Assembly: GCA_038087875.1 (NCBI GenBank)
Contig: JAXLNO010005534.1
Coordinates: forward strand, 1 to 64,000
From: Malacoraja senta
Taxonomy: Eukaryota
DNA length: 64,000 bases
Direction: 5' to 3'
A program made the position numbers and the translations under genes. Numbering within the stretch: the first letter of the stretch is position 1; every line of letters begins with the position of its first letter. Shown piece by piece: positions 22,533 to 57,546 of this stretch. The notes under the pieces are model-generated. The model was given only the letters and a program-made list of their open reading frames with translations, did not search any database and was not told where the DNA came from.

Positions 22533-23010
22533 GCATAGAACATAGAACAGTACAGCACAAGAACAGTCCCTTTGACCCACAATGTTTGTGCCGAACATGA
22601 TGCCAAGACCAATTGTTATCTGCTTGCACATAATCCATATCCATTCATTCCCTGCATATACATGTGCCTATCTAAAAGTCTCTTAAATGCCACTATCATA
22701 TCTGCTTCCACCACCACCCCCGGCAGCACATTCCAGTCACTCGCCACCCTTGGCGTAAAACACTTGACCTGCACATCTTTTTTAAACTTTGCCACTCATT
22801 GTAAAGCTATACCTGCTCTTATTTGATATTTCCTTCCTGGGTAAAAAGTCTGATGGTCTACACTATCTGTACTCCTCCCAGTTTGATATATTACTGTCAG
22901 GTCTCCCCTCAATCCCCGACATTCCAGAGAAAACAATCCAAGTCTGTCCAACTTCTCCCTGTGGCTAATACCCCACTAATCCAGACATCATTCCGGTAGA
23001 CCTCCTCTGC
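22533..23010 (-). mobile_element. Old CR1 3' fragment overlapping the last codons and 3' UTR of the MHC-like gene
   Basis: The minus strand reads CAG AGG AGG TCT ACC GGA ATG ATG TCT GGA TTA (QRRSTGMMSGL, compare CR1 QRRFTRMIPG), then GACAGACTTGGATTGTTTTCTCTGGAA, and ends in a (GTTCTAT)n tail. Confidence 0.75.
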
Positions 23011-23217
23011 TTCCCAACGGAAGCTGGTTGTGCTTCATGGTCACTGCAGTCCTCTCCTGGTCTCTGCTGTTGTCAGCTGGTCCCTGTTCATTGAGAATTT
23101 TTCTCCTTTTCCTCTTCTTCCAGCAACCAATTCCAAGGATGATCCCCAGGAGAATAAGAGGAACGATTACAGCTCCAGTCACGATCCTAATCTTTATATC
23201 TTCTTTTGCTGCCCTCT
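22988..23217 (-). CDS. MHC class I-like gene: connecting peptide / transmembrane / cytoplasmic exon
   Basis: Acceptor ctgccaacag|AG in phase 1, matching the alpha3 donor. Translation (E)RAAKEDIKIRIVTGAVIVPLILLGIILGIGCWKKRKRRK...GLPE* gives a hydrophobic helix plus a basic stop-transfer segment. Linking it to alpha3 across a 9.2-kb intron is inference. Confidence 0.72.
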
Positions 23218-23452
23218 CTGTTGGCAGATATAGGGCATTTTAAACATTTATTGATCAATAACGACATTGTAATGATTTTATTTTTTTGAATTTAATCTTT
23301 TTATTTGAATTTCACGGCAATTAACATACATACAATAATAACAGACAGTAATAATCAAGGCATAATTGTACAACAGTATGTAAGCGATCCTCAAAACCTT
23401 TACCCATACTCACCTTCAACCCACCCAAGTCAGGTCGGAGCCAAACGGGGAC

Positions 23453-23534
23453 AAACAACACTCACATACGTACACATCCACACACAAATGGTAGAATAGG
23501 CGAAACAAAATGTGCTATATAAAAGAAATAAAAA

Positions 23535-23596
<62 letters not shown>

Positions 23597-23678
23597 TTTT
23601 TATTTCTTTTATATAGCACATTTTGTTTCGTCTATTCTACCATTTGTGTGTGGATGTGTACGTATGTGAGTGTTGTTT
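23453..23678. repeat. 226-bp near-perfect palindrome centred on a (TA)n tract in the L1 3' UTR
   Basis: The left arm AAACAACACTCACATACG...AAAAGAAATAAAAAATAAAT is mirrored on the right. One mismatch was seen (GGCG vs GACG). Confidence 0.9.
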
Positions 23679-23816
23679 ATATATAAATATATAAAATAAA
23701 ATGAAAATTTTAAAAAAAAGTATATATATATACATATATATCTAAATAAACAATTGTAGGGAGGGGGGATTAAGGGGAAAGCAGCTGCTGTAGAACAAAA
23801 CGATGATGGAGAACAC

Positions 23817-26800
23817 TCAGTCCTCTTCCGAGTCCGGGGACAAGGTAAGAGAGTTAACCAGTTCAAAGAAAGGGTTCCATGTATCTAGGAATGTCTTGGT
23901 AGAGCCTTTGAGAGAGAACCTAAGTTTTTCAAGTTTCAGATTGTAAAGCACCTCCTTAATCCAACGGGCGTGTGTCGGGGGACAGGTGAGCCTCCAACTA
24001 AGCAAGATCAGTCTCCGGGCTAACAAGGTTGTAAAAGCTAGGACCCGTTTCACCGCAACAGAGAGGTTGGTATTGGGAGGGGTACCGAAAATGGCTGACA
24101 TTGGATTTGGAAGAATAGTCTGGTCGTAAGCTCTGCTTATCAATTCAAAAGCACTCCTCCAAAAGGCTGCTAGCTTAGGGCAAGACCAAAACATGTGGCT
24201 ATGGTTGGCAGGAGATTGACTACATCTGTTACAGGTGTCATTGACAGCTGGGTACATTCTAGCTAATCTTGCATTTGTATAGTGGACTTTGTAAAGGACT
24301 TTGCATTGGATTAGGCCATGACGAGCGCATATGGAAGAAGAGTGGATCAAATCCAAGGCAGAGTCCCATTGCTGGTCTGTTAATTGCGTATTCAGCTCTC
24401 CCTCCCACGCAGCTTTTAATGAGGTATGAGGTTTCAATAAAACCGACCCTAGCAAATTATACAAAATAGAGATGCATTTCTTCCGATTGGGGTCTAAAGC
24501 TAAGATGATACCAGTCAGGGTTTCAGGAGGGCGATTTGGGAAGTAGGGAAATGTCTTCCTCACAAAATCCCTAATCTGGAAAAACCGAAAAAGGTGGGAG
24601 TTTGGGAGGTTGTAGTTAGACGAGAGCGCCGCGAAAGATGAGAAGATACCATCCTTATATAGGTTTTTAATACTACTGATGCCATTACTATGCCAGGTTT
24701 TAAATGCGTGGTCTATACTTGAAGGTTTAAAAATGTGATTTTTAAGCAGTGGGGTCAAGATGGAAGGACCCTGTAAACCGGTTTTTCCTAAATTGACTCC
24801 ATATCTTGAGCGAAAGGGACACAATTGGGCCTGCACCCACAGATGTTATAGAAAGGGGGAGTTGGGAGCATAGGACAGACCGCAATGGGAGACGTGAACT
24901 CGCCTTTTCCATATATACCCAGATCGGTGGGTGCTCGCAATCATCATTCATCCAATACAGGAGTTTTTGCAAGTTAGCTGCCCAGTAGTATCGCCTAAAA
25001 TCAGGGAGGGCCAAACCGCCATCACTCTTAGGCGACTGCAGTATCGCCTTTCGGATTCTGACCGGTTTGCTACCCCATAAGAATTTAGATATTGTCCTTT
25101 CTAATTTGTCAAAAAAAGATTTGGTGATAAGTATGGGGACATGCTGGAAAAGATACAGGAATTTGGGTAGGACAACCATCTTAACCAGATTTATCCGGCC
25201 CACGAGGGATAGTGGTAAGACTGACCAGCGATCAAAATCTTTTTCGGCTTTCTCAACCAGAGGCAAAAAGTTTGTGCGGAACATATCAGATAAGGGTATT
25301 GTGATAAAAACGCCGACATAGCGAAACCCATCCTCTGCCCTTTTGAATGAGGTTAAAGAGCGAGGGAGCTGTTTAGCCGGTAAGTTAATCGGTAATAGCT
25401 CACTCTTTTGGTAGTTAAGTTTATAACCAGATTATGCACCAAACCGTTCTAAAATATTCATAATCACAGGGAGAGAACTGACTAGGTTCGAGATGTACAG
25501 GAGCAGGTCATCCGCATACAATGAGACTTTATGAGTTGTGTCAAACCGTGTAATACCTTTAAAGCCCTTCTCTGCGCGTAACCAGACCGCCAGGGGTTCT
25601 ATCGCGACATCAAACAAGAGTGGAGATAACGGGCAACCCTGTCTGGTACCTCTCTGAAGTGTGAAGTGGGGCGACAGTATGTCGTTTGTTTGTACTGAAG
25701 CCACCGGGGATGAATATAATAGGCTCACCCAGAGAATAAAACTGTTACCGAGGACAAACCTATCCATCGCTTCATATAGGTACCTCCACTCGACCCTGTC
25801 GAAGGCCTTTTCGGCATCGAGGGAGACCACCATCTCCGGGGTCTCATTACTCGAAGAGTGAATGATGTTAAGGAGACGCCTAGTATTATGGGAAGACTGT
25901 CGACCAGGTATAAACCCTGTTTGATCCAACGAGATAATAGAGGGCATCACTCGCTGAAGACGAAGCGCAAGGGCTTTAGAAAGGATTTTGAGGTCCACAT
26001 TCAGGAGTGAGATTGGTCTATAGCTACCACAAAGCAGGGGATCTTTCTCCTTTTTAAGAATTAGGGAGATGGTAGCCCACGACAAGGTGGGCGGTAGGCG
26101 ACGATTTAAAAACGCCTCGTTGTTCATGTCTCTCAGGACTGATGCAAGGAGGTCAGAGAAAGCTTTGTAATATTCTACAGAGAAGCCGTCAGGGCCGGGT
26201 GACTTTCCGCTTTGCAGCGATGTGATGGCTGCTTGGACCTCAGCTACAGTTATGGGACCACCCAAGTCTCTCATGGCTTCTTCGTCTATTCGGGGAAGCG
26301 TCATACTACTGAACATGTCACCTGCAGTGGGGGGACAGTCGGAAGTGTATAGTTCAGTGTAGAATTTAGCAAATGCTTCATTAATTCTGAGAGGATCAGT
26401 ATGAGTCTCCCCTGAGCTGGATCTAATGGCTGGAATTAACCGTGAAGGCGCCTCTGTTCTGGCCTGATGGGCCAAAAGCTTTTCAGCTTTATCCCCAGAT
26501 TCAAAAAAGTATTTGCCTAGATTTAAGCAGTCGTAGTTTGGCTTTATTAATGGATATGAGGTCAAAGTCTGTTTGTAGCCTAAGGCGTTCTCTATAGAGA
26601 TTAGGGTTTGGGTCAGATGCATATTTGTCATCAATGTCCTTTATTTTTTGTAACAGATCTGCCGTTTGGAACGTCTCCGTTCTTTTCAGGTTGGAGATAA
26701 AGGAAATGAGTTGGCCCCTAATATAGGCTTTTGAAGCTTCCCAAAGTATACCTCTTTCTATGTCCGGCGAGTCATTCAGCTCAAAATATAGGGTGATTTG

Positions 26801-27607
26801 GGAGTGCAAGAATTGCATGTAGTGAGCCTCTGCTAATAATGAGGAGTTGAACCTCCACTTAAAGGGGTTAGTTCGTTTACGAAAATGAAGATCAAGGGAG
26901 GTCGCAGCATGATCTGATATTACGATGCTATGGTACTCACTGGATTTGATTTTGGAAAGCAATCTATTATCTAAAAGAAAGAAGTCTATACGGGTAAACA
27001 TACGATGTACGTGGGAGAAAAATGAAAATAATTTAGTCGTGGGGAATATCAATCTCCATGGATCTGTGAGCCCCAGTTGTTTGGCGAGAACATGCAGAGT
27101 CTTACCGGATTTAGTTAAAGTAGAGGCTTTATTCGAAGATCTATCCAGTATAGGATCTTGGACCAGATTAAAATCTCCACCCACAATGACATGGTGATTT
27201 TCAATATTTGGGAGAGATGTAAAAAATTTAGTTATAAATGAGCTGTCATCCCAGTTGGGTCCATAAATGCATGCCAATATGACAGGTGTGTCTTGCAATT
27301 TGCCCGACACCATGACAAAGCGACCAGCAGGGTCTTCCACAGTTTTCTGTGGTTCGAACTTAATGTTCTTACGAATCAGGATAGCGGTGCCCCTGGCCCT
27401 ATTATTAAATTTCGAGTGAAATAGTTGACTAATCCAGCCTCTCTTAAGCCGTGTTACCTCTCTGTTGCGAAGGTGGGTCTCTTGGATAAAGAATATATCG
27501 CCTTTGAGCTGTTGCAAATGGGCCAAGATCCTATCAGTTTTGGTAGAACTTCCCATCCCTCTCACGTTCCACGAGACAAATCTAAAAGTATCGTTTGTGT
27601 TGGCCAT
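23817..27607 (-). pseudogene. L1 ORF2 (APE endonuclease + reverse transcriptase) with two frameshifts and one premature stop
   Basis: EN motifs VSWNVRG, IQETH, GGDFN and SDH. RT motifs KSPGPDG, YRPISLLN, SLDAEKAFD, RGTRQGCPLSP and LYADD. C-terminal CNRC...HMFWSC. In-frame TAA at 25434-25432; frame changes near 26.6 and 24.8 kb. Confidence 0.92.
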
Positions 27608-28840
27608 TTTTAGCTATATGGGTAATGCGCTGTAGTTCTGCAAAACGAGACGGAAGAGCGCATCGAAGCCAGCTGCCGAGAGTGGGGATGTGGAGGGGGA
27701 GGGGGGGGGGGGAATATATATATGTGAAGTAAAATAAAACAACAACAAAAACAAAAACAAAAACAAAAAACAAGAACAAAAACATACACACACGGCAAAC
27801 AAGTGGAACACATATCATTTAACCATCTTTCAAACCTGAGTCTCCAGACCAGAGATTCCCCCATGTCTCAACTGAACCTTAAGTGCCCCTTGCACCAAGG
27901 TGCGTTGTCCTCGCTTCCGCATGGAGATATCCGATCTTAACTCCCTATATCACAGCTTCCCAAAGCGACGGAGTCACTCAGTGTCGATAAGGTAACATGA
28001 AATAAAATAAGTATAGTAATAGTAATAATGACGGTGATGATAATAATTTGAAAAACAGAGTAGGAATAAAGTAAGATAAACATACATTGGTAAATGCAAG
28101 GTTAAAATAATAGCCATAATGGTTGCACTGCCAGTACCATTGCTAACACTAATAGTAATAATAGCAATGATGATAGTCACAATAAGACAAAGCCTATTAA
28201 CAAAATGGTGATACTAAATAAACCGGCTAACGTGTAAGTGGAGCCAGAATAACTTCCTTTGGTGTTGCATAGTATGTCTTAAAATCGACAAAGTATAAAG
28301 AGAGAGTTGGCGTTGGAAAAGTTAGCAAATTACAAACTGGGCTGTTGGATTAAAGCACAGCGCTAAAGGCATCAATTATGTTTTGTTAAACAAAAAAGGT
28401 ATAAGATAAGATTTGTATAACACCGCCCTGGCTGTAATGAGCTCTTATCAGCCCCAGACAGTTCGTTATGAAGATTAGTATAAGCAAACTAGCCAGGTGC
28501 TGACAGCGTTAGCGGCCAGCTGCTAAGAACAGGAAGGCAGAGACCAAATCACAAACCACAAAGTGGGTCCCTTAAGCCCAGCTTTATAGCATATGCTGGT
28601 GAGGGACCCCTCAAGCACGATTATGCATAGACAATATAAGAAAAAGTTGATATAAAACATTCACAATTCCTGGTGATTTCTTACCTGCCTCATACATTTC
28701 GAAACCGGGGTCTAGTATAATCAGCAATGCTGAACGCTAACCATAGCTAGTTATTAGGAACAGTCAGGCTAAAGTTAGTCCATGTAACCATAGATTAACC
28801 GGGCCCCTGTGCCACTCGAATATAGACGTACTGAACGAAG

Positions 28841-29662
28841 TCAGTCATCTGTGGGTCCCGGTCTGCGTCGATGGTGAGATGAGATGAAATCCCGAGCGTC
28901 CTCGGGAGATGTTAGTCGTCGCCTCTTTCCCTCCCCGGACATTATGAACAGCTTGGCTGGATAATGAAGGGAGGGTTTGAAACCCAGGTTATACAGCTCC
29001 TTCATAACGTCTCGGTACGCGAAGCGTTGTTCAACTATGTCGGGACAGTGGTCTTCGAAAATGTGGAACGGGGTATCTTTGTATTTCAGCTTACCCCTCT
29101 GCCTCCGAGCCTCACGTACCACGAACTCACGGGTCTGGTATCTATGAAAGCAGATCACAACTGCTCTGGGTTTCTCGCCAGGGCTTGGCTTGGCTGTTAG
29201 CGTACGGTGGGCTCGGTCTAGTTCCGGGGCTGATTCCAGTATGTGTTCGCCAAGAGTCTCGAGCAGAAGTTGAGAAAAAAACGCTGTTGTTTGGGAGCCC
29301 TCGATATTCTCGGGAAGACCCACTATCCTTATGTTATTTCGGCAACTCCTGCCTTCCAGGCTAATAAGCTTAGCCTTTACCTTGGCGTTCTCTTCGGTCA
29401 CCGTAGTTAACATTAACGTTATAGCTCGTATATCTTGGCTAGTGGTAGCGGCAAAAGACTCTAATGACGAGGGACGGTGTTGGTGGTCTAACATAGTGGT
29501 CTGGATATTGTCCAGCTTCGTTTCCAATTTGGTGAACGCAGTGTTAAATTCTGCCAGTAACAATACCTTATGTTCTGTTAACATGGCTGCTAGCGTGGCC
29601 ATACTGGCGCTGGTCGCCGGGTCTTCTGTCTTTTGCTCCGCTTTCTTTCCTTTGTTTGGCAT
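28841..29662 (-). CDS. L1 ORF1 RNA-binding protein (coiled coil + RRM + CTD), intact
   Basis: LEGRSCRNNIRIVGLPE, ELDRAHR, PRAVVICF and YPAKL motifs of the L1 ORF1p (Transposase_22) family. Confidence 0.9.
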   Translation of the reverse strand: MPNKGKKAEQKTEDPATSASMATLAAMLTEHKVLLLAEFNTAFTKLETKLDNIQTTMLDHQHRPSSLESFAATTSQDIRAITLMLTTVTEENAKVKAKLISLEGRSCRNNIRIVGLPENIEGSQTTAFFSQLLLETLGEHILESAPELDRAHRTLTAKPSPGEKPRAVVICFHRYQTREFVVREARRQRGKLKYKDTPFHIFEDHCPDIVEQRFAYRDVMKELYNLGFKPSLHYPAKLFIMSGEGKRRRLTSPEDARDFISSHHRRRPGPTDD

Positions 29663-30164
29663 CTTTACAGCATAGACAGGTACTCACAATGATGTTTAAA
29701 TGTTTGTGGGTGGTTAAAAAACTTAGACTGAGCTGTAATAAAAGTTGGAGGTGAAAAGGTCGGGAGCGTGGAAAAGTGCGACTACTCCAGCATGTCGCCC
29801 CCACCGGAAGTCCTGTAATGATTTTATTATCTACATTAAACTAGCATTGTTCACATCTAAATAAAAATAACAAAGTCTTAGATTTATGTAATTGTCCAGA
29901 CTATGGATGTTTAAATAGATCAATGAAAAATCTTTGAAGTTCATATTAGCGTTGAGATTTTATCTGCAGCATTTAATTATGAATTTAAAGAATCAAGCAT
30001 ATGTCAGAAATAGATGACTATATGCAGTGTAGAGGTCAACAAGGCTATTTTCTTATGTTGACCATTGTTATTTTAGCAAATAAAAGTGAACCCACTTATA
30101 GTTGATAAAACTTCAAAGGTTTTAAACTTTGCTGATATTTCAATATCTGAGAGTTTGATATTCT

Positions 30165-30280
30165 CACACACACACACACTCTCTTTCTCTCCCTCCCTCC
30201 CTCCCTCTCCCCCTCTCTCTGTCTCACACACATGAGCGCACACAAACACACACACGCGCGCGCACACACACACACATAGG
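30165..30280. repeat. Compound (CA)n/(CT)n/(CCCT)n microsatellite
   Basis: Direct reading. Confidence 0.85.
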
Positions 30281-31689
30281 CACACTCAGACATTAACACT
30301 ACTGTCTATTTGTAGTGACCAGCAATTTTAACCATGTCAGCTTGGCCCTGGTGTGAAGATATTTGCAGAGGTTTTGACTGGAACAAATAAGTCAGCTACA
30401 GAACAGGTGCTGCTACTTCAGACTGATAATGGGGTTGGATGTGGGACCACTATTGGCCTTTTGTGCAACTAGCTACTATAAAAAAATTAGCTAGATGCCC
30501 AAGAAATAAGATAAGAGACCTTGGCCAGGATCAGCCTATCTTGCTTCCTACATTTGGATCTGTGAGTTAAGGGTGACATAAGAATATTTTTTACCATTGG
30601 AGCAGAAGTAGGCCTTTCAGTCCATTGAGTCTACTCCACCATTCAGTCATGGCAGATCTATTTTTACCTCTGAATCCCATTCTCCAGCCTTCTCCCTGTA
30701 ACCTTTGGCAGCCATATTAATCAAGAACCTATCATTCTCTGCTTTAAAATATGCAATGACTTGACCCACACAGCTGTCTGTATCAATGAATTCCACAGAT
30801 TCACCACCCTGTGACTAATGAAATTCCTCCTCATCTCCATTTTGAAAGTACGTATTTTTATTGTGAGGCTGTGCTAGACTCTCCCATTACTGAAAACATC
30901 CTATCCACATCCACTAACTGGGACTTTCATTAACTGGTATGTTTCAGAGATTCCCCCCTCATCCTTCTAAATCCCACGAGCGCAGGCACAGAGACTTCAA
31001 ACATTCCTCATACGTTAAATCAATCATCCCCAGGACACACTTCCTCTGGACCCTCTCCAAAGCCAGCACATCCTTTCTAATATGGAGCCCAAAACTGCTC
31101 ACAATATTTCAAATGTATCCTCACCAGTGCCCGATAAATCCTCAGCATTATATCATTGTTTTTATCTTCTAGTCCCCCCGAAATGTCCCCCCTAAACTTC
31201 TAGTCCCCCCGAATTAAGGGACAGAAGTTTAGGGGTAACATGAGGGGGAACTTCTTTACTCAGAGAGTGGTGGCTGTGTGGAATGAGCTTCCAGTGAAGG
31301 TGGTGGAGGCAGGTTCGTTTTTATCGTTTAAAAATAAATTGGATAGTTATATGGACGGGAAAGGAATGGAGGGTTATGGTCTGAGCGCAGGTATATGGGA
31401 TTAGGGGAGAATACGTGTTCGGCACGGACTAGAAGGGTCGAGATGGCCTTTTTCCGTGCTGTAATTGTTATATGGTTATATGGTTAAATGAATGCTGGCA
31501 TTGCATTTGCCTTACTTACCACTGACTCAATCTGCAAATGAACTATTTGGGAATCCTGCACTAGTACTCCCACTTTGTAGCTCAGATTTCTGAATTCTCT
31601 CCCCATTTATTAAATAGTCTATGTCTTTATTCCGACTGCCAAAATGTAAAACCAGACACTTGCTACACTGTATTACATTTGGCTCTGCT

Positions 31690-32355
31690 TTGCCCACTCG
31701 GTGGAACTGCTGCCTTACAGCGCCAGAGACCCGGTTCAATTCTGACTACGGGTCCCGTCTGTACAGAGGTTTGTACCTTCTCCCCGGGACTTGCGTGGGT
31801 TTTACCCTGGATCTCCGGTTTCCTCCCTCAGTCCAAAGACATACAGGTTTGTAGGTTAATTGGCTTGGTATAATTGTAAATTGTCCCCTAATAAGTAAGA
31901 TAATGTAAGTGTGCAGGGATCGCTGGTTGACGCAGACTCGTGGGCCAAAGGGCCGGTTTCTGCGCTGTATCTCTTAAAGTAAAACCACATTCCATTGACT
32001 ATCAATAATTCTGGGCAATTAGATAACCACAAATTAATAATGGGTGGCACAGTGGCGTAGCGGTAGAGCTGCTGCCTTACTGCACCAGAGACCTGGGTTT
32101 GATCCTGACTACAGGTGCTGTCTGCAAGGACATTGTATGTTCTCCCTGTGACTGCGTGGGTTTTCTCCGGGTGCTCCGGTTTCCTCCCACACTCCAAAGG
32201 CATACAGGCTTGAAGGTTACTTGGCTTAGGTAAAATTGTAAATTGTCCCCAGTGTGTTGGTTAGTGTAAATGTACGGGATGATCACTGTTCAGCGAGGAC
32301 TCAGTGAGCTGTGGGGCCTGTATCTGCACCATATCTCTAAAGTCTAAAATCTAAA
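31690..32355 (+). mobile_element. Two adjacent V-SINE (HE1-like) copies
   Basis: Heads at about 31690 and 32043, each with a B-box-like motif and the conserved central domain. Confidence 0.75.
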
Positions 32356-32447
32356 TGCACAGTTTAGTTAAGAGTGTGTTGAGGCTGTTATCTCAGTCCA
32401 GGACGTTTATTGTCTCAAGTGATCAGCCTCATTGACTTGCCACTTAC

Positions 32448-32720
32448 CCTGTGGAACATTGACTCCCTGCAGCAGAGTTGCATGTTCGATGTAACAGGAG
32501 AATTTTGCCACATCTTCTCTACTCAGTTGAATTGTATTCTTCAGCTGGTAAGTCCCATCCCAATTGGGCAACAGATCACTGGATTCAGACTCGTGGTCTC
32601 CCTCACCATCTCTCAGCCACGTTACATCGATGCCCCGTGGGTAGAAGCCTGTGACAAGGCAGGAGAGTCTCAGTGATTGTGACTCATCACGTTTAATCCC
32701 AATAAACACCTCAGGGGTTT
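32448..32720 (-). CDS. MHC class I-like gene: alpha3 (Ig C1) exon
   Basis: Acceptor acacttgcag|AA, donor G|GTAAGT, 273 nt, phase 1/1. Motifs LSCLVTGFYP, VTWLRDG, LLPNWDGTYQ and FSCYIEH. Confidence 0.93.
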
Positions 32721-33534
32721 CTGCAAGTGTAGGAAGCGTCAGAATCAGTGAAGACATGAACAAAAGCCTTCAATTGTAAGATCACTGCAACTCACCTCTT
32801 TCCCAATCAGTTTTTTCTCCAGCTGAACAAAGTTTCCAGCCTAGACCCAAAATGCTGGAATAACTCAGCAGGTCAGGCAGCATCTCTGGAGAGAAGGAAT
32901 GCCCAGAGATGCTATCTGACCCACTGAGGTACTCCAACATCTTCTATCTTCGGTGTAAACCATCATCTGCAGTTCTATCTTGCACAAAGTTTACAGCCTT
33001 TTCTCTTTTCATTTTGCATTTCTGGCAAAACAACAAAACATTTAGTTTTAATATCACTGACATGCTCCTTATCTTAGCTCCAGACTTGAACTGACAGCGC
33101 AGATGAAAGGAGAATGCAGGGCCCAATGGAGGAGTATAACTCACCATTGGGATTGATACTGTAGACATGATTGCTTCTACTTGTTCATGAATCTCTGCTG
33201 AATAATAACACAAAATATTCCAAGAGGGAATGGGAGAAAGAAGTTCTTCAACCAGAGAACTGTTGGAAATTGGATGTCACCATCCCAAGGAGTAATAGAG
33301 GCAAATAGAGAATCTGATTGGGTTTCTGATCAGCACAGCAACAGACCCTTCAGGCCACAAAGTCAATGCTAAACATAAGACCAAGATACATATCCCTCCA
33401 TTTCTTGAATATCTATATGACTGTGGATAGAGGACGCTGGTACAATATTTATCTTTCACTTGCACTTCCTACCCACTGGCTCCATCTAAGAGGCACGTTG
33501 CCAGACAATTTACTGATACCCACGTTGTAGAACA

Positions 33535-33826
33535 GGGTGGCGAAGCAGTGGAGCTACTGCCTTACAGCGCCAGAGACCTGGGTTTGTTACTAACTACGGG
33601 TGCTTGTCTTTACGCAGTTTGTACGTTCTCCCTGTGACCTGCGTGGGTTTTATCCGAGATCTTTGGTTTCCCCTCACACTCGAAAGACGTACAAATTTGT
33701 AGGTTAATTGGATTGGTATAAATGCAAATTGTCCCTAGTGTGTGTAGGATAGTGTTAGTGTGCGGGCATGGCTGCTCGGTGCGGTGTCGGTGGGTTTCCG
33801 AGCTGTATCACTAAACTAAACTAAAT
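33535..33826 (+). mobile_element. V-SINE (HE1-like) in MHC-like intron
   Basis: Same head, central domain and (TAAAC)n tail as the other copies. Confidence 0.8.
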
Positions 33827-33924
33827 AATTACTCAAGTGACAGCCTGACGTGCATGATATTTCCCACCTGATCTATCCAGAGGATATCCTCTGGCCCATC
33901 AGTCAGAGTGCGTACGTCGTGTAC

Positions 33925-34200
33925 CTCTCCTCTGTAGTGCTTCTTGTCCACACTCCAGATATACCAGCAGCCATTTCACACAGTCCTTCTCCAGGAGATC
34001 TTTGAAATACTTGTTCATGAAGGTGTTGACGTTCCACCGATCTGCTAGCATCTGGAAATCTGGACGTAGTGCAATCCAGCGCATTCTGTCCTTGTCAAAA
34101 GCACAGGCATCCTCCCCATCATAACCCAGTCTGACAAACCCATCAGTGGAATTGTCACTGTCCACTTCACAGCCGCAGAAACCCTGGACAAAGAAAACAG
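33925..34200 (-). CDS. MHC class I-like gene: alpha2 exon
   Basis: Acceptor cagccccag|CT, donor G|GTACAC, 276 nt (the canonical alpha2 size), phase 1/1. Motifs VQGFCGCE, LGYDGED, RWIA, DRW and DCVKWLLVYLECG, with the C101/C164 pair. Confidence 0.93.
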
Positions 34201-35957
34201 CTGGGGCTGAGGTAGGGGTGGAGGATTTGTGTTGGGGAGAGTGGATGGAAGGGAGAGGCAATTTACAAATCAGTTCTCAGCATGGTACAAACAGGCATAA
34301 CAGTACACAACATAGAGCTGTACAGCACAGGAGCAGGTTTAGCTCAGAGATACAGTGCGGAAAGAGGCCCTTCGGCCCACCGAGTCCGCACTGACCAGTG
34401 ATCCCCGCATATTAACACTATCCCACACAGACTACTTTTCTTTCCAGCTTTCTCCACTCTACCCCATCACTCTAAATGGTCCTGGTCTCATATGTTTTCT
34501 GTCCATTTTTCCACAGCATGCTGCCTGACTCGTTGAGTTCCTCCTGTTTGTTTTAAATTCAGATTGGCAGCATCTGCAGTTTGCTGTGACTCCATCTTAG
34601 CACAATGGATGATCAGTGTGGATTCAGTGAGCAGAAGGGCCAGTTTCCATGCTGTGTGACGCAATGACTCAATGACCCATGGTTTATATACTGAGTGCAT
34701 GGACTAACCTCAAGTGTTGAGGGGGGAAGCTTTACTGTTGCGGATGTAACACTAAAGGAGTTCTGCTATGTCAGAAGGGTAGAACTCAGATTTCTGCACT
34801 GTCGTACATAAAGAACAGAGGAAGGAGTGCATTGTCAGATGGGCAATGCTACAGAGCCAACAGGTCAGTCTGAAGGTTAAGGCAATGCAGATGGGAAGTA
34901 CATCAAGGCTGTTGCACTGTGTGGGATTGCTACACCCTCTGTGGATTGTTGCCAATATTGAGGGAATGCTGGATTAACAGAATATTATTGTTGAGGGAAT
35001 ACATCATAGTCACCATCAACCAGCTTAAATCAAGGTCCCATCTCTAGGTGATCAGGCTATAAGTAAACTAATGGTTTCTCCCTCATTCCAGCCCAATAAA
35101 ACAGATGATCCAATCCATCCACTTATTACTGGTGTTGAATATCAAATGCTTAACCCATAAAGTGACTATCACCAGCCAACTGTTATCAATGGGTGTTCAG
35201 CAGTTAGGACACATTAAATATAGACGATGGGCCGTGTCTCTATCAAAATGTGATGGAGTAAATGTCTGAAACAGCATCAATGGTGCTGAAGTGAAAAAGG
35301 TTGAGAGCTTCTGGTTCACCTACTGCCTCAGGAGACTAAGGAAATGCGGCATCTCCAATGACTCTTACAAACTTCTACAAATGTGCCATAGAAAGCATAC
35401 TGACAGGTTGCATCACAACTTAGTTTGGAAAGAGTTCTGCCCAAGACCGCTGGAAATTGCAGAGAGGTGGAGATGTAGCACAGTCGATCACACAAACATG
35501 ATTCCCCACCAGTGAATCCATCTATATTTCAACTGGCTCAGGAAAGCAGACAACATAATCAAAGATTCATCCCGCTCTGGTCATTCCTTCTTCTTCCTGC
35601 AGAAGGTACGTAAGCATTAAAGCGTGCACCACCAGACTCAGTAACTGTTTCCTCCCCTATGTTATCAGGTTTCTGAACAGTCCTCCCTTATGCTAGGGTT
35701 CACCTCAACCCCATTGTAGACACTGGACTTTGTCTCTGGCACTGGTGCCTTACAAAGCTGAGAACTACATTCTGCACTCTTTGCTCTACCTATTGTACGA
35801 GTTTGGTTTGATTGTATTTATGAATAGTTTTCTTTGATGTGATTGACTAACATGCAAAAAAAGTGTATCAGAGAATCATGTGACAGCAACAAAACTAAAA
35901 CAAAATCCATTTGTGCCATCACTGGGTGTCTACCCCAGGTCCGCTCACGACACTTAC

Positions 35958-36218
35958 TCGAGATACCATGTTGCTGTTGGTAGACTATTTCAGCATTTCC
36001 TCTGACAATCCCATGAAAACCTGCAACTGTGATGGCCATTGAATCCCAGTGATCCTGCGGGAAAGACTGGGCCATCCATCGCTGTCTGGCAACAGCCCGC
36101 TCTAGTGTGCTGTCAAAATATGCTATCTGGAGGTCATCCAGCATTGCTACCATACTGTACTCAGGCAGCACACTCAATCCATGGTTCAACAGGTAGTAAA
36201 ATGCAAGATGGTGAAAAT
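35958..36218 (-). CDS. MHC class I-like gene: alpha1 exon
   Basis: Acceptor gcattgcag|AT, donor A|GTAAGT, 261 nt, phase 1/1. Translation (D)FHHLAFYYLLNHGLSVLPEYSMVAMLDDLQIAYFDS...RQRWM...DHWD. Confidence 0.92.
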
Positions 36219-36414
36219 CTGCAATGCATAAACAAAAATAAGTATGATTGTATCATTCACTGAAAATAACTAACAGTTATTAATGCTAAAACTGATAACA
36301 ATACAAGAACTTTGAATAAGGGAGTCACAAGGACCTGCAGATGCAAGTGCTGGAGGAACTCAGTGGGGCAGGCAGCATCAATGATCAGGTGACAATTTGT
36401 GTCAGGAGCCTTTA

Positions 36415-36725
36415 GTTTAGTTTCTAGCTTAGAGATACAGCATGGAAACAGGCCCTTCGGGCCACTGAGTCCACACTGACCAGCAACCCCCACACGCTAA
36501 CACTATCCTACACACACAAGGGACAATTTACATTCTACGCCAAGTCAATTAAACTACAAACCTGTACGTCATGGAATGTGGGAAGAATCTGAAGATCTCA
36601 GGAAAATCCCACCCGGTCAGGTGGAGAATGTACAAACTCCATACAGACAGGACCCGTAGTCAGGATCCAACCTGGGCATTGGTGCTGTAAGGGCGATAAG
36701 GCAGCATCTCTAATGCTGCACCATT
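36415..36725 (-). mobile_element. V-SINE (HE1-like)
   Basis: Reverse complement of the SINE consensus seen elsewhere in the window. Confidence 0.75.
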
Positions 36726-37327
36726 GAGCCTTCTTCAAGTGTTGGCTAGATGGGCTCTGATACTTATTCCACCAATTGTGGTCGAGGTATTGAATGATCC
36801 TATTGGATTGCTTCCCATCTTCAAAGATCTATTATTATCTATCATGTCGATACAGCCTACTAGTTACAATATTCCAAAATTCAAAGAATATTTTATTATA
36901 TTAAGAAAATGGACAACGTCAAGGAGATTTTATAAAATCATAGAGAGGTAAAGTCAAAGAGTCATACAGCAGGGAATCAGGACCTACGGCAATATGGCCT
37001 AATTCAATCATGGCTGCTCTATCTCGCCCTCTCAACCACATTCCCTGCTTTCGCCCCATAACCCTTGACACCCATACTGATCAAGAATCTGTCAATATCC
37101 ACCTGAGAAATATCCATTGACGTGGGCTCCAAGGCTGTCTGAGGAGGCCCATATCCTTCTAAACCTATCTATCCATGTACCAGATTAAATGTTTCTTAAA
37201 TGTTGCGATAGTACCTGCCTGAACTCCCTTCTCCGGCAGTTCATTCAGTACTCCCACCACAGCTATGCCTCTGGTTCTTATTAAATCTTTCCCCCCTCAT
37301 TTTAAACTTATGTATTCATTTTTTGCC

Positions 37328-39724
37328 CATTTTGGTTTCACCATGTAGAAATTACAGCTGTGTTTATACATAGTCCCCCCCATTTCAGGGCACAATAATG
37401 TTTGGGACATGGCTTCGCAGATGTATGTAATTGCTCAGGGGTATTTAAATGCCTCCTTAATGCAGGTATAAGAGAACTCAGCATCTAGTCTTTCCTCCAG
37501 TCTTTCAATCACCTTTGGAAACTTTTATTGCTGTTCATCAACAGGAGGACCTGAGTTGTGCCAATGAAAGTAAAAGAGACCATTATAATAATAATAACTT
37601 TATTTATACTTTAAAAACAACCACAGTTGCAACAAAGTGCTGTACATGACTAATCATGGACAAGAAATTATTACATAACAATAAAAATATTAAACGAAAG
37701 AGTAAAAACAATAAAATTAAAAACATTAAAAGCACTTAAAACAGGAGCAAAGTCTCAAGCAGTGTCAAAAGCCAAGGAATATAAATGTGTTTTAATACTG
37801 GTTTTGAAGATGGACAGTGAGTGGGCCTGTCTGATGTACAACGGCAGGGTGTTCTAGAGTGCTGGAGCAGCAACAGAGAAGGCTCTATCCCCTCTGAGCT
37901 TCCGCTTAGACCTCGGTACCTCCAGGAGCAGCTGATCAGCTGACCTGAGGCACCGGGCAGGAGCGTATGGGTGGAGCAGTTCAGAGAGGTAAGGCGGGGC
38001 GAGCCCATTTAGAGATTTAAAAACAAATAAAAGAATTTTAAAATGAACTCGAAAGTGCACCGGGAGCCAGTGTAGGCAGGCCAGAATTGGCGTTGTGTGC
38101 TCCCTCTTTCGAGTTCCAGATAAAAGGCGAGCAGCAGCATTTTTAACCAACTGGAGACGAGCCAGTGAAGATCGTGCAACTCCAAAATAGAGTGCGTTAC
38201 AGTAATCCAGCCTAGATGTAATAAAGGCATGGATTACTGTTTCAAAATGCTGCCGCTCGAGAATGGGCTTCACCTTTGCCAGCTTCCTTAGGTGAAAGAA
38301 GCTGGACTTAACCACCGCGCCTATTTGATGATCTAATTTAAAATCACTGTCCATCCTAAAACCTAGGTTCAAAACTGTTGACTTCACGTACCGTGCCAGT
38401 GGACCCAAGTCAACAAGGGGAGGTTCACGGCAGCCATTGGGGCCAAACAATATCACCTCTGTCTTCTTTATGAGACTGAGAAACAAGAATAAAACTGTTC
38501 GAGACATCAGCCAAACCTTAGGCTTACCAAAATCAAACTGTTTGGAACATCATTAAGAAGAAAGAGAGCACTGTGAGCTTACTAATCGCAAAGAGACTGG
38601 CAGGCCAAGGAACACCTCCACAGCTGATGACAGAAGACTACTCTCTATAATAAAGACAAAACCCCAATCCTTTACTAATCGCAAAGGGACTGACAGGTCA
38701 GAAACACTCATCAGGAGTCAGGTGTGGATTTGCCAATGACCACTGTCCGCAGAAGACTTCATGAACAGAAATACAGAGGCTGCACTGCAAGATGCAAACC
38801 ACTGTTTAGCCGCAAAAACAGGATGGCCGGGTTACAGTTTGCCAAGAAGTACTTAAAAGAGCAACCACAGTTCTGGAAAAAGGTCTTCTGGTCAGATGAT
38901 ACAAAGATTAACATATCAGAGTGATGGCAAGAGCAAAGTATGGAGGAGAGAAGGAACTGCCCTAGATCCAAAGCATACCACCTCATCTGTGAAACACGGT
39001 GGTGGGGGTGTTGTGGGCTGGGCATGTATGGCTGCTGAAGGTACTGGCTAACTTAGCTTTGTTGACCATTCAGCTACTGATGGTAGCAGCATAATGAATT
39101 CTGAAGTGTATAGACACATCCTATATGCTCAAGTTCAAACACATTGGCCTCAAAACACATTGCCCAGCGGTTCATACTACAGCAAGACAATGATCCCTAA
39201 AGCAACAAAGGAGTTTTTCAAAGCTAAAAAATTGTTAATTCTTGAGTGGCCAAGTCAATCACCCGATCTGAACACAACTGAGCATGCCTTTTATATGCCA
39301 AAGAGAAAACTGAAGGGGACTAGCCCCCAAAACAAGCACAGGCTGTAATACAGGCCTGGCAGAGCATCGCCAGAGAAGACACCCAGCAACTGGCGATGTC
39401 CATGAATCACAGACTTCAAGCAGTCATTGCATGCAAAGGATATGCAACAAAATACTAAGCATGACTACTTTCATTTACATGACATTGCTGTGTCCCAAAC
39501 ATTATGGTGCACTAAAATGGGGCAGACTGTGTATTTTGTCTAAATTGACTGCTGTAATTTCTACATGGTGAAACCAAAATGATTAAAAAATTGCCTTTTT
39601 AAAAATCTGACAATGTGCACTTTAACCACATGTGATTTTTTTCTATTACAAATCTCAAATTATGGAGTACAGAGGCAAATAAATAAATGATGGGTCTTTG
39701 TCCGAAACATTATGGAGGTCACAG
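37328..39724 (+). mobile_element. Tc1-family DNA transposon remnant, interrupted by an L2
   Basis: Inverted CATTTTGGTTTCACCATGTAGAAATTACAGC / GCTGTAATTTCTACATGGTGAAACCAAAATG. The right terminus is followed by TA (39725-39726). Transposase remnants include MKVKET.MRLRNKNK, RRRLHEQKYRG, FWKKVFWSDDTK and WPSQSPDLNTTEH. Confidence 0.85.
37587..38467 (-). mobile_element. 5'-truncated L2-clade LINE inserted at the start of the Tc1 transposase
   Basis: ORF KKTEVILFGP...VIHAFITSRLDYCNALY...LHWLPV...GLAPPYL...GDRAFSVAAP and an (ATT)n-type tail. A TTAT duplication flanks it and the Tc1 frame resumes on the far side. Confidence 0.88.
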
Positions 39725-40044
39725 TATGTACGATCAATTCACACTGGCCAATTTACCTCTCAGCCTCTCATCTTTGGAATATTGGGAGAAACTGGAATAA
39801 CCAGAGGAAGCACACATGGTTTCAGGGAAAGAATAAAAATGCCACACAGGTTGTAGTAGAGATCAGGATTGAGTCCAGGTCCTCATAAGCACCATCTCTA
39901 TGAGCTGCAACCCTGAAACGCCCATCTGGTGGGAAATCTCTGCATGGAATGGGACACTTCTGACTTATGAGGACATTGGGATTCTGTAAATCGGAGCAGT
40001 AAGTGTAAAGAAGACCTTACTTGTGAGTCCCGACTATCAAGGCT

Positions 40045-40100
40045 TGGGTGGGGTGGGGGGGGGTGGATGGGGGGGTGGGGGTGGGGGGGTGGTTGTGGGA
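40045..40100 (+). repeat. G-tract with G-quadruplex potential
   Basis: More than four G-runs of 3 or more nt with short loops. Confidence 0.6.
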
Positions 40101-40224
40101 GGGTGTCAATGTATGACTTGGTCTGGGAGGAGACTATAATAAACAGGGTCTAAACTGAAACTTGACACAACATACTGGAGTAACTCAGTGGGTCAGGCAG
40201 CATCTCCGGAGAAAAGGAAAAGGT

Positions 40225-40252
40225 GACGTTTCGGGTCGAGACCCTTCTTCAG
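40225..40252 (-). ncRNA. Minimal type I hammerhead-ribozyme core in a PLE-derived short repeat
   Basis: Reads CUGAAGA-A-GGGUC(UC)GACCC-GAAA-CG-UC. Both conserved core boxes are present, with helix II and a palindromic ACGU helix III. Helix I is only about 2 bp in this copy. Confidence 0.6.
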
Positions 40253-40840
40253 ACTGAGAATCAGGAGACAGGGAACCAAGCGATACGAAAAGGTACATAG
40301 AACAAATTAATAAAAGATATACCCCCGACTTTGTCTGAAGAAGTCCCTTGACCTGAAACGCCATCTATTCCTTTTCTCCAGCGATGCTGCCTGACTTCCT
40401 GATTTACTCCAGCTTTTTGTGTCTATCTTCAGTGTAAACCAGCATCTGCATCACCAGTCTGAAGAAGGGTCTAGACCCAAAACATCACCCATTTCGTCTC
40501 TCCAGAGATGCTGCCTGTCCCGCTGAGTTACTCCAGCTTTTTGTGTCTATCTTCGGTTTAAATCAGCATCTGCAGTTCCTTCTTACACATCTAAACTGAT
40601 GTCTAAACTGAAACATCACCTATCCATGTTGTCCCGACATACTGCCTGACCTGCTGAATTACTCCAGCATTTTATGTGTATTAACCAGCATCTGCATTTT
40701 CTTGTTTCTACATGAATAAGCAGTATTTGTTCTGTGATTAAGTTTACATGCAGCACACCAGACAGTGTCAAAGTTCAGTGTCAAAGTGAGGTGAGAAGGG
40801 GCCCCAAAGGGAGAGTTAGAAGTGTCTGTTTCAGTCTTAC

Positions 40841-40960
40841 CAGGAGAAACATAAGAAGGCTAGTGGAATACAGTAATGATAAAATCCATGTGACTTCCCA
40901 AAACAATCGACAGCCAAGGATTTTTGTTTTATATGTTATTATTTCAACAGGGGAATCGCC
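40841..40960 (-). other. Candidate MHC-like leader exon (40889-40841) with TATA box and kB-like site; contains an in-frame TAG
   Basis: ATG at 40889, 49 nt to the G|GTAAGA donor (phase 1, as alpha1 requires). TATAAAA at 40933-40927 and GGCGATTCCCC at 40960-40950. Codon 10 is TAG. Confidence 0.4.
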
Positions 40961-41379
40961 ATTATATTTACTGTCATCTGATAACAATGGGATTAAACTT
41001 TCAGGACGAGTAGGTTTGTAATCTCCAAGCCTTGACGATTGTCAGAACAGTTAGAAAGGAAGCATTGTGTGGGAAGAAATTGCTCATCAGATTCCCATTA
41101 AATCTTCCCCCCCCCCCCCTCAATTTAAACCTATGTCTTCTGGTTCTCGATTCTGTAATCTGTTGAATATGTTGCCCACATGAACATTTCCAGATTGAGA
41201 TTGATATATTTTTGTTCATTAAGGGTGTAATGGGTTAGAGCTGAGCCACAATGTCTGTGCCGAACATGATGTGAAGTTAAACTAAACTCTTCATGCTTGT
41301 ACATGATTCATATCCCTCAAGTCCCTACATATCCACGTGCCTATCCTCAAGCTTCTTAAATCTCATTATCGTCTTCTGG

Positions 41380-57545: not shown

Positions 57546-57546
57546 A

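What the first reader, a model, noticed from the sequence alone, without database searches (positions are those of the whole stretch)
22988..36218. Spliced non-classical MHC class I-like gene with a remodelled, hydrophobic groove
Seen: four exons (261, 276, 273 and 230 nt) with canonical phase-1 junctions that splice into one open frame. By hand alignment to HLA-A2 numbering, the peptide-terminus anchors are mostly lost: Y7>F, Y59>H, Y/R84>Q, Y123>A, T143>L, Y159>L. K146>R, W147 and Y171 remain. The N86 glycan site is absent, with one new NST sequon in alpha2. The beta2m-contact residues Q96, D119, G120 and D122, the C101-C164 pair and an acidic alpha3 loop are kept. Established: loss of these anchors marks non-classical class I molecules, some of which bind lipids or metabolites (CD1, MR1), and cartilaginous fish have several non-classical lineages. 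Inference: this molecule may present a non-peptide ligand and may be a poorly described or new lineage. I cannot assign the lineage by eye.
Basis: partly seen in the sequence, partly recalled or inferred. Interest (0 to 1): 0.82.

Follow-up and report, generated by a model that had tools for sequence, protein, structure and literature searches.

The report
Intact skate UGA-sister class I gene
This is a complete, apparently working gene for a non-classical MHC class I molecule with a greasy groove that has lost the peptide anchors. It belongs to an old shark-and-ray lineage that sits beside, and is sister to, the lipid-binding-type gene UGA, and that has no name in the papers I could read.

Summary
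Four minus-strand exons (261, 276, 273 and 230 nt) with AG/GT phase-1 junctions splice into one open frame. I also found the missing leader exon 9 kb upstream (45278-45329), giving a 363-aa type I membrane protein.

The gene is the ortholog of a little skate RefSeq model labelled "MR1-like, partial" (92% identical). It belongs to a lineage with typically one gene per species in rays and sharks (54-72% identical), and every other class I is 36% identical or less.

PDB titles show that its nearest solved relative, 9ch4, is shark UGA (39% identity) and that 8gm8 is UFA. This lineage is neither. Trees place it as sister to UGA, and it lies about 42 kb upstream of UGA in the MHC-Ib cluster of skate and sawfish.

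Seven of nine peptide-terminus anchors are changed, and the MR1 ligand residues are absent. Its groove positions are the most hydrophobic of all lineages compared. α1 and α2 are under purifying selection and are better conserved than α3. A hydrophobic non-peptide ligand is the best inference, but it is untested.

The scan noted this same lineage earlier on two other pieces of this genome, as broken copies. The copy in this window is intact.

The parts
45433..45472 (-). Putative core promoter with two CCAAT-type boxes: ATTGG at 45468-45472 and CCAAT at 45433-45437, about 140 and 105 nt upstream of the ATG
   Evidence: Read directly from the sequence. No ISRE was seen. Function not tested.
45278..45329 (-). 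Exon 1: start codon and 17-aa signal peptide plus one base (phase 1), donor GTAAAC
   Evidence: Leader scan. The peptide is identical at L001:100-151 in little skate. G+AT makes Asp1 of the mature protein.
36219..45277 (-). Intron 1 (9.06 kb), repeat-rich
   Evidence: Collinear blocks with the little skate locus at 85-90% identity.
35958..36218 (-). Exon 2: α1 domain (261 nt)
   Evidence: Best solved relative is 9ch4 (UGA), E 4.9e-21. 95% identical to P0001.
33925..34200 (-). Exon 3: α2 domain (276 nt). Contains C96, C98, the N104-S-T sequon, C120, C161 and C171.
   Evidence: Pfam MHC_I 60 bits. The upstream of two possible AG acceptors is the one that keeps the frame and matches ortholog length.
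32448..32720 (-). Exon 4: α3 C1-set Ig domain (273 nt)
   Evidence: Pfam C1-set 55.7 bits.
23283..29813 (-). Sense-oriented L1-type LINE inserted in intron 4, ending 50 nt upstream of the last exon's acceptor. Flanked by the target-site duplication TAAAATCATTACA.
   Evidence: Absent from the little skate empty site. RT and endonuclease ORFs are split over several frames.
22988..23217 (-). Exon 5: connecting peptide, 22-aa transmembrane helix, basic KKRKRRK stop-transfer, 43-aa tail without tyrosine, TGA stop

Best explanation
What is shown. The window holds an intact five-exon gene (22988-45329, minus strand). It encodes a type I membrane, MHC class I-like heavy chain: signal peptide, α1-α2 platform, C1-set α3, transmembrane helix and a short tail. 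It is the skate ortholog of a low-copy non-classical lineage, typically one gene per species, that is present in both rays and sharks. That lineage is sister to the UGA lineage (PDB 9ch4) and lies head-to-tail upstream of UGA in the MHC-Ib cluster, so it most likely arose by a tandem duplication older than the shark-ray split.

What is inferred. The chain pairs with β2-microglobulin, because the contact residues and the canonical α2 disulfide are kept. Its groove has lost the residues that clamp peptide ends and is lined almost entirely by conserved hydrophobic residues, so it most likely holds a hydrophobic non-peptide ligand (lipid-like, as reported for UGA and UFA). It would display one conserved ligand class to a conserved receptor, such as an innate-like T-cell receptor or an NK-type receptor. 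It lacks the CD1/UGA-type tyrosine sorting tail, so it probably loads in the secretory pathway or at the cell surface rather than by endosomal recycling.
For: Gene structure and intactness. The same exons and splice sites give an open frame in little skate.

Selection between the two skates: dN/dS is 0.32 for α1 and 0.19 for α2; for α1+α2 versus neutrality, Fisher p=0.004.

Orthologous group: 54-72% identity in 12+ elasmobranch species, then a drop to 36% or less. The clade has 100/100 support and its branching follows the ray/shark split.

Relation to UGA: sister at 92/75 and 97/84 with more taxa.

Identity of solved relatives: 9ch4 is titled UGA and is the top VIA match (Z 27.6, 39% identity). 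8gm8 is titled UFA.

Synteny: X lies about 42 kb upstream of UGA on the same strand in little skate. In sawfish it is followed by three UGA-type genes, all tagged MHC-Ib, between TRIM39-like genes and COL11A2.

Fold: AF2 model of the 92%-identical ortholog has pLDDT 86 and a class I fold.

Groove, 42 pocket positions: mean Kyte-Doolittle 1.39, 70% hydrophobic, 5% charged. Compare UGA 0.85/58%/11%, UFA 1.28/62%/7%, classical-type 0.41/58%/18%. The α2-helix pocket residues W143, M149, Y152, F153, L156, L157 and D160, and the small floor residues G94 and A119, are shared with UGA.

Conservation, ray versus shark: α1 67%, α2 73%, α3 58%.

Literature: UFA and UGA are reported as CD1-like lipid binders (PMC12562908).
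Against: No transcript, ligand or experimental structure exists for this protein.

No Logan transcript contigs fell in its 90% cluster, whereas UGA has several.

The pocket-position mapping rests on a sequence alignment.

Groove positions are only slightly more conserved than the rest of α1-α2 (0.89 versus 0.82).

A 6.5-kb sense-oriented L1 sits 50 nt from the last acceptor in this species and could lower or truncate expression.

α3 evolves nearly neutrally between the two skates (dN/dS 0.79, not significant).

Lipid binding by UGA and UFA is known to me only from a review citing a personal communication.
Confidence: 0.6

Rival explanations
1. It presents a restricted set of specialised peptides or lipopeptides (N-acylated or otherwise modified), as chicken YF1*7.1, Mamu-B*098 or H2-M3 do, rather than free lipids.
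For: W147 and Y171 equivalents are kept and K146 is conservatively R. Chicken YF1*7.1 structures with N-acylated ligands are among the best structural matches (Z 26.4-27.0). The overall fold is indistinguishable from peptide-binding class I.
Against: Seven of nine terminus anchors are changed, including both ends of the groove. Charged pocket residues fall to 5%. All class I-like folds score almost equally, so the YF1 match is not specific.
Confidence: 0.15
2. It carries no ligand and acts only as a surface ligand for a receptor, like MIC, HFE, T10/T22 or FcRn-type molecules, with the groove residues conserved for fold or for receptor contact.
For: Helix residues are strongly conserved overall (27 of 44 α2-helix positions near-invariant), which would also fit receptor contact. 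There is no direct evidence of a cavity. HFE and ZAG are among the Swiss-Prot fold matches.
Against: Floor positions are small or hydrophobic (G94, C96, A119) and conserved, which makes space rather than filling it. The sister lineage UGA is reported to bind lipids (PMC12562908). β2m contact residues are kept, unlike MIC.
Confidence: 0.13
3. It is a fish MR1 equivalent that captures small metabolites, as the automatic 'MR1-like' names suggest.
For: MR1 is the best PDB sequence match for α2 (E 2e-16, same length pattern) and the best Swiss-Prot fold match. The lineage shows the MR1-like pattern of α1-α2 being more conserved than α3. An invariant cysteine (C96, at HLA position 99) points to the groove floor.
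Against: The MR1 ligand residues are not there: K43 is replaced by A/I/T, R9 by Y, R94 by G, Y62 by M, W69 by F and W156 by L; only Y152 is kept. Identity to MR1 is 27-31%, barely above chicken class I at 29%. α1 is far closer to UGA. The literature places MR1 in mammals only (PMC12562908).
Confidence: 0.05
4. In this species the gene is silenced or on its way to being a pseudogene, because of the L1 insertion next to the last exon, like the broken copies elsewhere in this genome.
For: A sense-oriented L1 lies 50 nt from the acceptor and is absent in little skate. Skates carry at least one partial duplicate (L002, with α2 and α3 only). Earlier scan notes report stop-codon copies on other scaffolds. 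No transcript evidence was found.
Against: All five exons, all splice sites and the frame are intact. The 50 nt left upstream of the acceptor leave room for the branch point and polypyrimidine tract. α1-α2 show purifying selection against the little skate ortholog.
Confidence: 0.07

Closest known systems
Shark/ray UGA non-classical class I (PDB 9ch4)
   Same: UGA is the sister clade in trees, the best solved match (Z 27.6) and the adjacent gene on the same strand. The two share α1 motifs (…LNHG…LPEYS…, AGFHGI.KG) and an α2-helix groove face (W, M, Y, F, L, L, D at HLA positions 147, 152, 155, 156, 159, 160, 163). They also share small floor residues G97 and A123 (HLA numbering). Both are found in sharks and rays.
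   Different: Identity is only 38-43% per domain, against 60-64% within UGA between rays and sharks. Both genes coexist in each species. This lineage lacks UGA's YxxΦ tail motif and the N86-type glycan site. It has C instead of F at HLA position 99 and a more hydrophobic α1-helix face (M61, V65, I78, V79 against polar residues in UGA).
Shark/ray UFA non-classical class I (PDB 8gm8)
   Same: Belongs to the same wider clade (80/72 and 91/88 support). It has a hydrophobic groove, is MHC-linked (PMC10751288) and is reported as CD1-like.
   Different: About 29% identity. UFA has a short tail-less hydrophobic end, whereas this protein has a transmembrane helix plus a 43-aa tail. UFA's α2 is highly divergent.
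Mammalian MR1
   Same: Best PDB sequence hit for α2, with the same indel pattern. Top Swiss-Prot fold hit. α1-α2 better conserved than α3. Low copy number and apparently monomorphic design.
   Different: K43, R9, R94, Y62, W69 and W156 are all replaced, mostly by hydrophobic or small residues. Identity is 27-31%. There is no orthology signal.
CD1 family
   Same: Non-peptide-type hydrophobic groove by composition, β2m-type design, and low copy number with conservation across species.
   Different: About 24% identity to a CD1b-like protein. In the quick tree the one CD1b-like row sat on a 2.4-unit branch outside the X+UGA+UFA group, a placement the tool flagged as unreliable. No tyrosine sorting motif. 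Depth of pockets unknown.
Classical class I (UAA type; nurse shark 6lup, P0149)
   Same: Same exon-domain plan, phase-1 introns, C101-C164 disulfide, β2m contact residues and α3 C1-set domain.
   Different: Only W147 and Y171 of the nine peptide-terminus anchors are unchanged. No N86 glycan. 30-34% identity.

Membership tests
MHC class I-like heavy chains (fold and domain plan) | α1-α2 platform followed by a C1-set Ig domain and a membrane anchor, encoded one domain per exon with phase-1 junctions | tested here: met
   Pfam MHC_I and C1-set. Exon structure. AF2 model of the 92%-identical ortholog matches class I structures at Z 25-27.6.
MHC class I-like heavy chains (fold and domain plan) | α2 disulfide (C101-C164) and β2m-contact residues Q96, D119, G120, D122 | tested here: met
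   C98/C161 and Q93, D115, G116, D118 are conserved in 10-15 of 15 lineage members (D115 lowest). Actual β2m pairing was not tested.
Classical peptide-presenting class I (UAA type) | Nine near-invariant residues that bind peptide termini (Y7, Y59, Y/R84, Y123, T143, K146, W147, Y159, Y171) | tested here: not met
   F, H, Q, A, L, R, W, L, Y in the columns where classical-type P0149 has Y, Y, R, F, T, K, W, Y, Y.
MR1 | Schiff-base lysine K43 plus R9, R94 and the aromatic cradle Y7, Y62, W69, W156 | tested here: not met
   From HMMER alignments to MR1 chains and the lineage alignment: A/I/T42, Y9, G94, F7, M61, F68, L156.
UGA lineage (9ch4) | Falls inside the UGA clade | tested here: not met
   The two clades are reciprocally monophyletic, each at 100/100, and both genes are present in the same species.
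UGA lineage (9ch4) | Cytoplasmic tail ending in a YxxΦ sorting motif | tested here: not met
   UGA tails end …YNVI, …YNAV, …YQNI. The window tail has no tyrosine, and no YxxΦ motif is visible in the complete ortholog tails printed, which I read by eye without running a search.
UFA lineage (8gm8) | Falls inside the UFA clade; tail-less hydrophobic C-terminus | tested here: not met
   UFA clade is separate at 100/100. 8gm8 is 52% identical to P0016. Identity of X to UFA is about 29%.
UEA-like multicopy shark lineage | Shark-only multicopy clade; in my sample it lacks C101-C164 | tested here: not met
   Separate clade at 100/100. X is present in rays and keeps the disulfide. The label 'UEA' for that clade is my inference from published descriptions, not from named sequences.
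UDA lineage | Keeps 8 of 9 peptide-terminus residues; present also in chimaeras (my recollection of Almeida et al. 2020, paper not held) | not testable with these tools
   No named UDA sequence was available. X keeps 2 of 9 anchors and has no chimaera member; Callorhinchus proteins form their own clade outside X+UGA+UFA.
UCA lineage (Squalus acanthias, Wang et al. 2003) | Clusters with the named dogfish sequence | not testable with these tools
   No Squalus or curated GenBank entry appeared among lineage members, even when the query was a squalomorph ortholog. That argues against identity but depends on database content.
CD1 | Deep A'/F' hydrophobic pockets holding lipid tails; CD1 sequence clade | tested here: inconclusive
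   Composition is hydrophobic, but pocket geometry could not be measured. The one CD1b-like sequence is 24% identical and does not group with X.

The most novel reading that the evidence does not exclude
This is a third ancient member, never described, of a hydrophobic-ligand-presenting class I module in cartilaginous fish (this lineage, UGA and UFA, with a related chimaera clade). It would have its own ligand class and trafficking route: no endosomal sorting tail, no N86 glycan, the most hydrophobic groove of the three, an invariant free cysteine on the groove floor (HLA position 99) that might even capture ligands covalently, and an MR1-like pattern of extreme α1-α2 conservation implying an invariant receptor.
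Probability: 0.2. Interest if true: 0.75.

Novelty: new member of a known kind. Interest (0 to 1): 0.55.

Why it matters
Whether lipid or metabolite presentation is as old as peptide presentation is an open question. UFA and UGA in sharks are the current evidence that it is.

A further conserved, low-copy lineage next to UGA, with an even greasier groove and no sorting motif, would mean the earliest jawed vertebrates already had several specialised non-peptide presenters. It would also give a concrete protein to express, load and crystallise.

Practically, the report supplies a corrected full-length gene model, with the leader exon and the right α2 donor, for a gene that RefSeq lists as partial in little skate. 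It also shows that this skate has an intact copy, not only the broken ones noted earlier.

Tried and rejected
- PDB codes. Searching the paper library for 9CH4 and 8GM8 gave only chance hits. The entry titles were obtained instead through fold searches.
- Key papers. The two J Immunol papers on UDA and UEA are not held, so their lineage definitions are quoted from memory and marked as such.
- Leader exon. A heuristic search (ATG, hydrophobic stretch, phase-1 GT) gave only false candidates. The real exon was found by similarity to shark leaders.
- Other genes in the window. There is no second class I exon in the window and no Rfam family. The rest is LINE and other repeat ORFs.
- A mislabel corrected. 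I first treated the large shark clade as 'classical-like'. Its columns showed no Y7 and no C101-C164, so I relabelled it UEA-like and used P0149 as the classical-type reference.
- Teleost 'MR1-like' proteins. Teleost and gadiform models that scored well with α1 are fused tandem genes, 26-34% identical per unit. They group with teleost lineages, not with this one.
- MR1 orthology was rejected on ligand residues.
- Alternative α2 acceptor. The AG at 34184, which has the better pyrimidine tract, was rejected because it gives a stop in frame.
- RefSeq insert. The 12-aa insert after α2 in the little skate model is a read-through of the donor. The window has a stop codon there, and no ortholog checked (13 of 14 models) has the insert; the Stegostoma model has a different, longer insert.
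- Groove geometry. Model coordinates are not exposed, so groove volume and cysteine distances could not be measured.

Full report
**1. The observation**

The gene lies on the minus strand. Reading the four stretches with their flanks and splicing them in a script gives these exons:
- α1: 35958-36218 (261 nt)
- α2: 33925-34200 (276 nt)
- α3: 32448-32720 (273 nt)
- connecting peptide, transmembrane, tail and stop: 22988-23217 (230 nt)

Each exon is preceded by AG, and the first three are followed by GT. All junctions are phase 1 and the joined frame is open.

For α2 there are two candidate acceptors. The downstream one (AG at 34184) has the better pyrimidine tract but runs into a stop. The upstream one keeps the frame and gives the 92-residue α2 seen in all orthologs.

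Pfam recognises MHC_I in α2 (60.2 bits) and weakly in α1 (21.6 bits, below the cut-off). It recognises C1-set in α3 (55.7 bits).

**2. The missing first exon**

Two shark orthologs start with a signal peptide, MLLVTLLNVYCVP.VSS. Scanning 28 kb upstream in three frames finds one clear match at 45329-45278. It reads MLLFTLLNTYGVATVSS, then one base G and the donor GTAAAC. Its score is 50 and the next best is 25. The identical peptide lies at the collinear place in little skate.

G+AT gives Asp as the first mature residue. The complete CDS is 1092 nt, encoding 363 aa. The gene spans 22988-45329, beyond the coordinates given.

Upstream of the ATG are an ATTGG box (about -140) and a CCAAT box (about -105). 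I saw no ISRE. This was not analysed further.

**3.

I checked these with an L-INS-i alignment of 70 cartilaginous-fish class I proteins. It includes a classical-type shark protein (P0149) that carries Y7, Y59, R84, T143, K146, W147, Y159 and Y171, and their columns fix the HLA numbering.

The other claims also hold:
- There is no N86 sequon, and there is one NST at mature position 104.
- The C101-C164 pair is present (C98-C161 here).
- The equivalents of Q96, D119, G120 and D122 are present.
- The α3 loop DGEGDHESESSD is acidic.

**4. What it belongs to**

*Closest relatives.* An exhaustive phmmer search of 1.84 billion representatives with α1 found one close relative. P0001 is 95% identical over α1 and is the little skate RefSeq model XP_055486430.1, named 'MR1-like, partial'. 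Re-splicing the little skate locus with the window's five exons gives an intact 363-aa protein that is 91.7% identical. Introns are 85-92% identical and collinear. The window therefore comes from another skate species closely related to Leucoraja.

*The orthologous group.* A search with P0001 gives one cluster in almost every species, at 54-72% identity:
- Rays: Pristis, Mobula, Hypanus, Hemitrygon.
- Sharks: Pristiophorus (two hits, one partial), Heptranchias, Scyliorhinus, Stegostoma, Hemiscyllium, Chiloscyllium, Mustelus, Cetorhinus, Carcharodon.

After these, identity drops sharply to 36% or less. All members are automatic predictions called 'MR1-like'. No curated entry and no Squalus entry is among them. 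I call this lineage X.

*Solved relatives.* By sequence, α1 is closest to 9ch4 (E 4.9e-21), α2 to MR1 (2e-16), and α3 to 9ch4 among single chains (6.4e-19). I modelled the ortholog (pLDDT 86) and used the fold searches to read the entry titles:
- 9ch4 is 'shark nonclassical MHC class I, UGA'. It is the top VIA match (Z 27.6, 39% identity).
- 8gm8 was reached through a model of a Cetorhinus relative. It is 'shark nonclassical MHC class I, UFA' (52% identity).

The proteins resembling 9ch4 form a second elasmobranch-wide lineage, UGA. Those resembling 8gm8 form a third, UFA.

*Trees.* Maximum-likelihood trees give X, UGA and UFA 100/100 each. X+UGA are sisters at 92/75 (44 rows) and 97/84 (57 rows). 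UFA joins them at 80/72 and 91/88. A Callorhinchus clade lies next outside. Within X the ray and shark sequences separate as the species do. Teleost proteins that NCBI also calls 'MR1-like' are 26-34% identical and group with teleost lineages.

*Other named lineages.*
- A large shark-only multicopy clade lacks Y7 and the α2 disulfide. It fits the published description of UEA, and X is not in it.
- UDA, as I recall its description (8 of 9 anchors kept, present in chimaeras), does not fit X.
- UCA could not be tested directly.

**5. Genomic setting**

In little skate, X lies about 42 kb upstream of a UGA gene on the same strand of one contig.

In the sawfish MHC map published with PMC10751288, the X ortholog (LOC127585976, tagged 'MHC-Ib') is followed 42 kb later by three UGA-type genes. 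They lie between TRIM39-like genes and COL11A2. This is the main MHC-Ib cluster of that paper.

The 64-kb window holds no other class I exon.

Little skate also has a partial duplicate with α2 and α3 only (L002). Earlier notes of this scan describe copies of the 'UGA-sister' lineage with stop codons on two other pieces of this genome. The copy in this window is intact.

**6. Function: what is shown and what is inferred**

*Shown:*
- The frame and splice sites are intact in two species.
- Between the two skates, dN/dS is 0.32 for α1 and 0.19 for α2 (α1+α2 against neutrality, p=0.004). α3 is near neutral at 0.79.
- Ray-versus-shark identity is 67% for α1, 73% for α2, 58% for α3 and 38% for the tail. 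The platform is better conserved than the Ig domain, the reverse of what I recall for classical class I (not tested here) and like the pattern I recall for MR1. For UGA the figures are 60%, 64%, 60% and 38%.
- At 42 pocket positions X has the highest mean hydropathy of all lineages compared:

| Lineage | Mean Kyte-Doolittle | Hydrophobic | Charged |
|---|---|---|---|
| X | 1.39 | 70% | 5% |
| UFA | 1.28 | 62% | 7% |
| UGA | 0.85 | 58% | 11% |
| UEA-like | 0.46 | 57% | 11% |
| Classical-type | 0.41 | 58% | 18% |

- X shares with UGA the α2-helix pocket residues W, M, Y, F, L, L, D and the small floor residues G (HLA 97) and A (HLA 123). Its α1-helix face is more hydrophobic than UGA's.
- Invariant features of X are C96 (HLA position 99), the NST sequon and the loss of the N86 site.
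- MR1's ligand residues K43, R9, R94, Y62, W69 and W156 are replaced by A/I/T, Y, G, M, F and L.
- The window tail has no tyrosine, and I saw no sorting motif in the ortholog tails by eye, whereas UGA tails end in YxxΦ.

*Inferred:*
- The chain pairs with β2m.
- It holds a conserved hydrophobic non-peptide ligand, by analogy with UGA and UFA. A review reports, from a personal communication, that those bind lipids like CD1d (PMC12562908).
- It is recognised by a conserved receptor.
- It loads outside the endosomal recycling route.

*Rivals.* The alternatives are specialised lipopeptides, no ligand at all, an MR1-type metabolite, or loss of function in this species.

**7. Caveats**

- There is no transcript evidence. 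Unlike UGA, X has no Logan transcript contigs in its cluster.
- A 6.5-kb L1 in sense orientation, with target-site duplication TAAAATCATTACA, lies 50 nt upstream of the last acceptor. It is absent from little skate and could reduce full-length mRNA.
- The pocket mapping is by alignment.
- The lineage names UEA, UDA and UCA are applied or excluded from descriptions, not from named sequences.

**8. Verdict**

The gene is a real, intact, non-classical class I gene with a hydrophobic groove lacking the peptide anchors. Its lineage is distinct from UFA, UGA, the UEA-like clade and classical-type genes. The accessible literature does not name it.

The lineage is already predicted in many RefSeq genomes and tagged MHC-Ib in one published table. 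It sits next to a structurally solved sister lineage and was already met by this scan. I rate it a new member of a known kind, of moderate interest.

Noticed in passing
window 23283-29813 (minus strand): An L1-type LINE about 6.5 kb long, in the same orientation as the gene, with an A-rich tail and the target-site duplication TAAAATCATTACA. It was inserted 50 nt upstream of the last exon's acceptor. The little skate ortholog has the empty site. The ORF2 region is split into at least four frames.
   Followed up: partly
L001 (little skate JAMYXN010000384.1), gene XP_055486430.1: The RefSeq model is marked partial because it lacks the leader exon, which lies 9.9 kb upstream (L001:100-151). It also carries a 12-aa insert after α2 that comes from reading past the true donor. 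Using the window's splice sites gives a clean 363-aa protein.
   Followed up: yes
L002 (little skate JAMYXN010000412.1), model XP_055486496.1: A second copy of the lineage in little skate, holding only the α2 and α3 region (86-90% identical to the window). No leader, α1 or TM exon lies within 10 kb. It is a partial duplicate or a haplotig with a deletion. Its α3 shares the segment …IHESESS… with the window (…DHESESS…), where the full copy in little skate has …VPGFESS…, which suggests gene conversion or a clustered change.
   Followed up: partly
UGA-lineage proteins P0234-P0246, P0119, P0121: Cytoplasmic tails of UGA proteins from sharks and rays end in a tyrosine motif (…YNVI, …YNAV, …DYQNIP…), like the endosomal sorting signal of CD1b, CD1c and CD1d.
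   Followed up: partly
proteins P0145-P0205 (shark-only multicopy clade): This large clade has V/I at the C101 position and L/F/Y at the C164 position, so it lacks the canonical α2 disulfide. It also has W at the position where X and UGA have G (HLA 97).
   Followed up: no
Callorhinchus proteins P0162, P0171, P0177 (49-kb contig): Three chimaera class I-like proteins, named 'MR1-like' or 'ZAG-like', form a long-branched clade just outside X+UGA+UFA (89/88 support). They may be the holocephalan counterpart of that whole group.
   Followed up: partly
window 1592-2917, 7814-9958, 19082-20146, 41360-44127, 52669-53526, 56636-57874, 59139-60330: The rest of the window is dense with reverse-transcriptase and LINE-type ORFs on both strands. 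Several are repeated within the window and in the little skate loci at 70-95% identity. No other cellular gene was seen.
   Followed up: no
window 45433-45472 (minus strand): An ATTGG box and a CCAAT box lie about 140 and 105 nt upstream of the start codon of the newly found leader exon. No ISRE-like element is seen in the 500 nt upstream.
   Followed up: no
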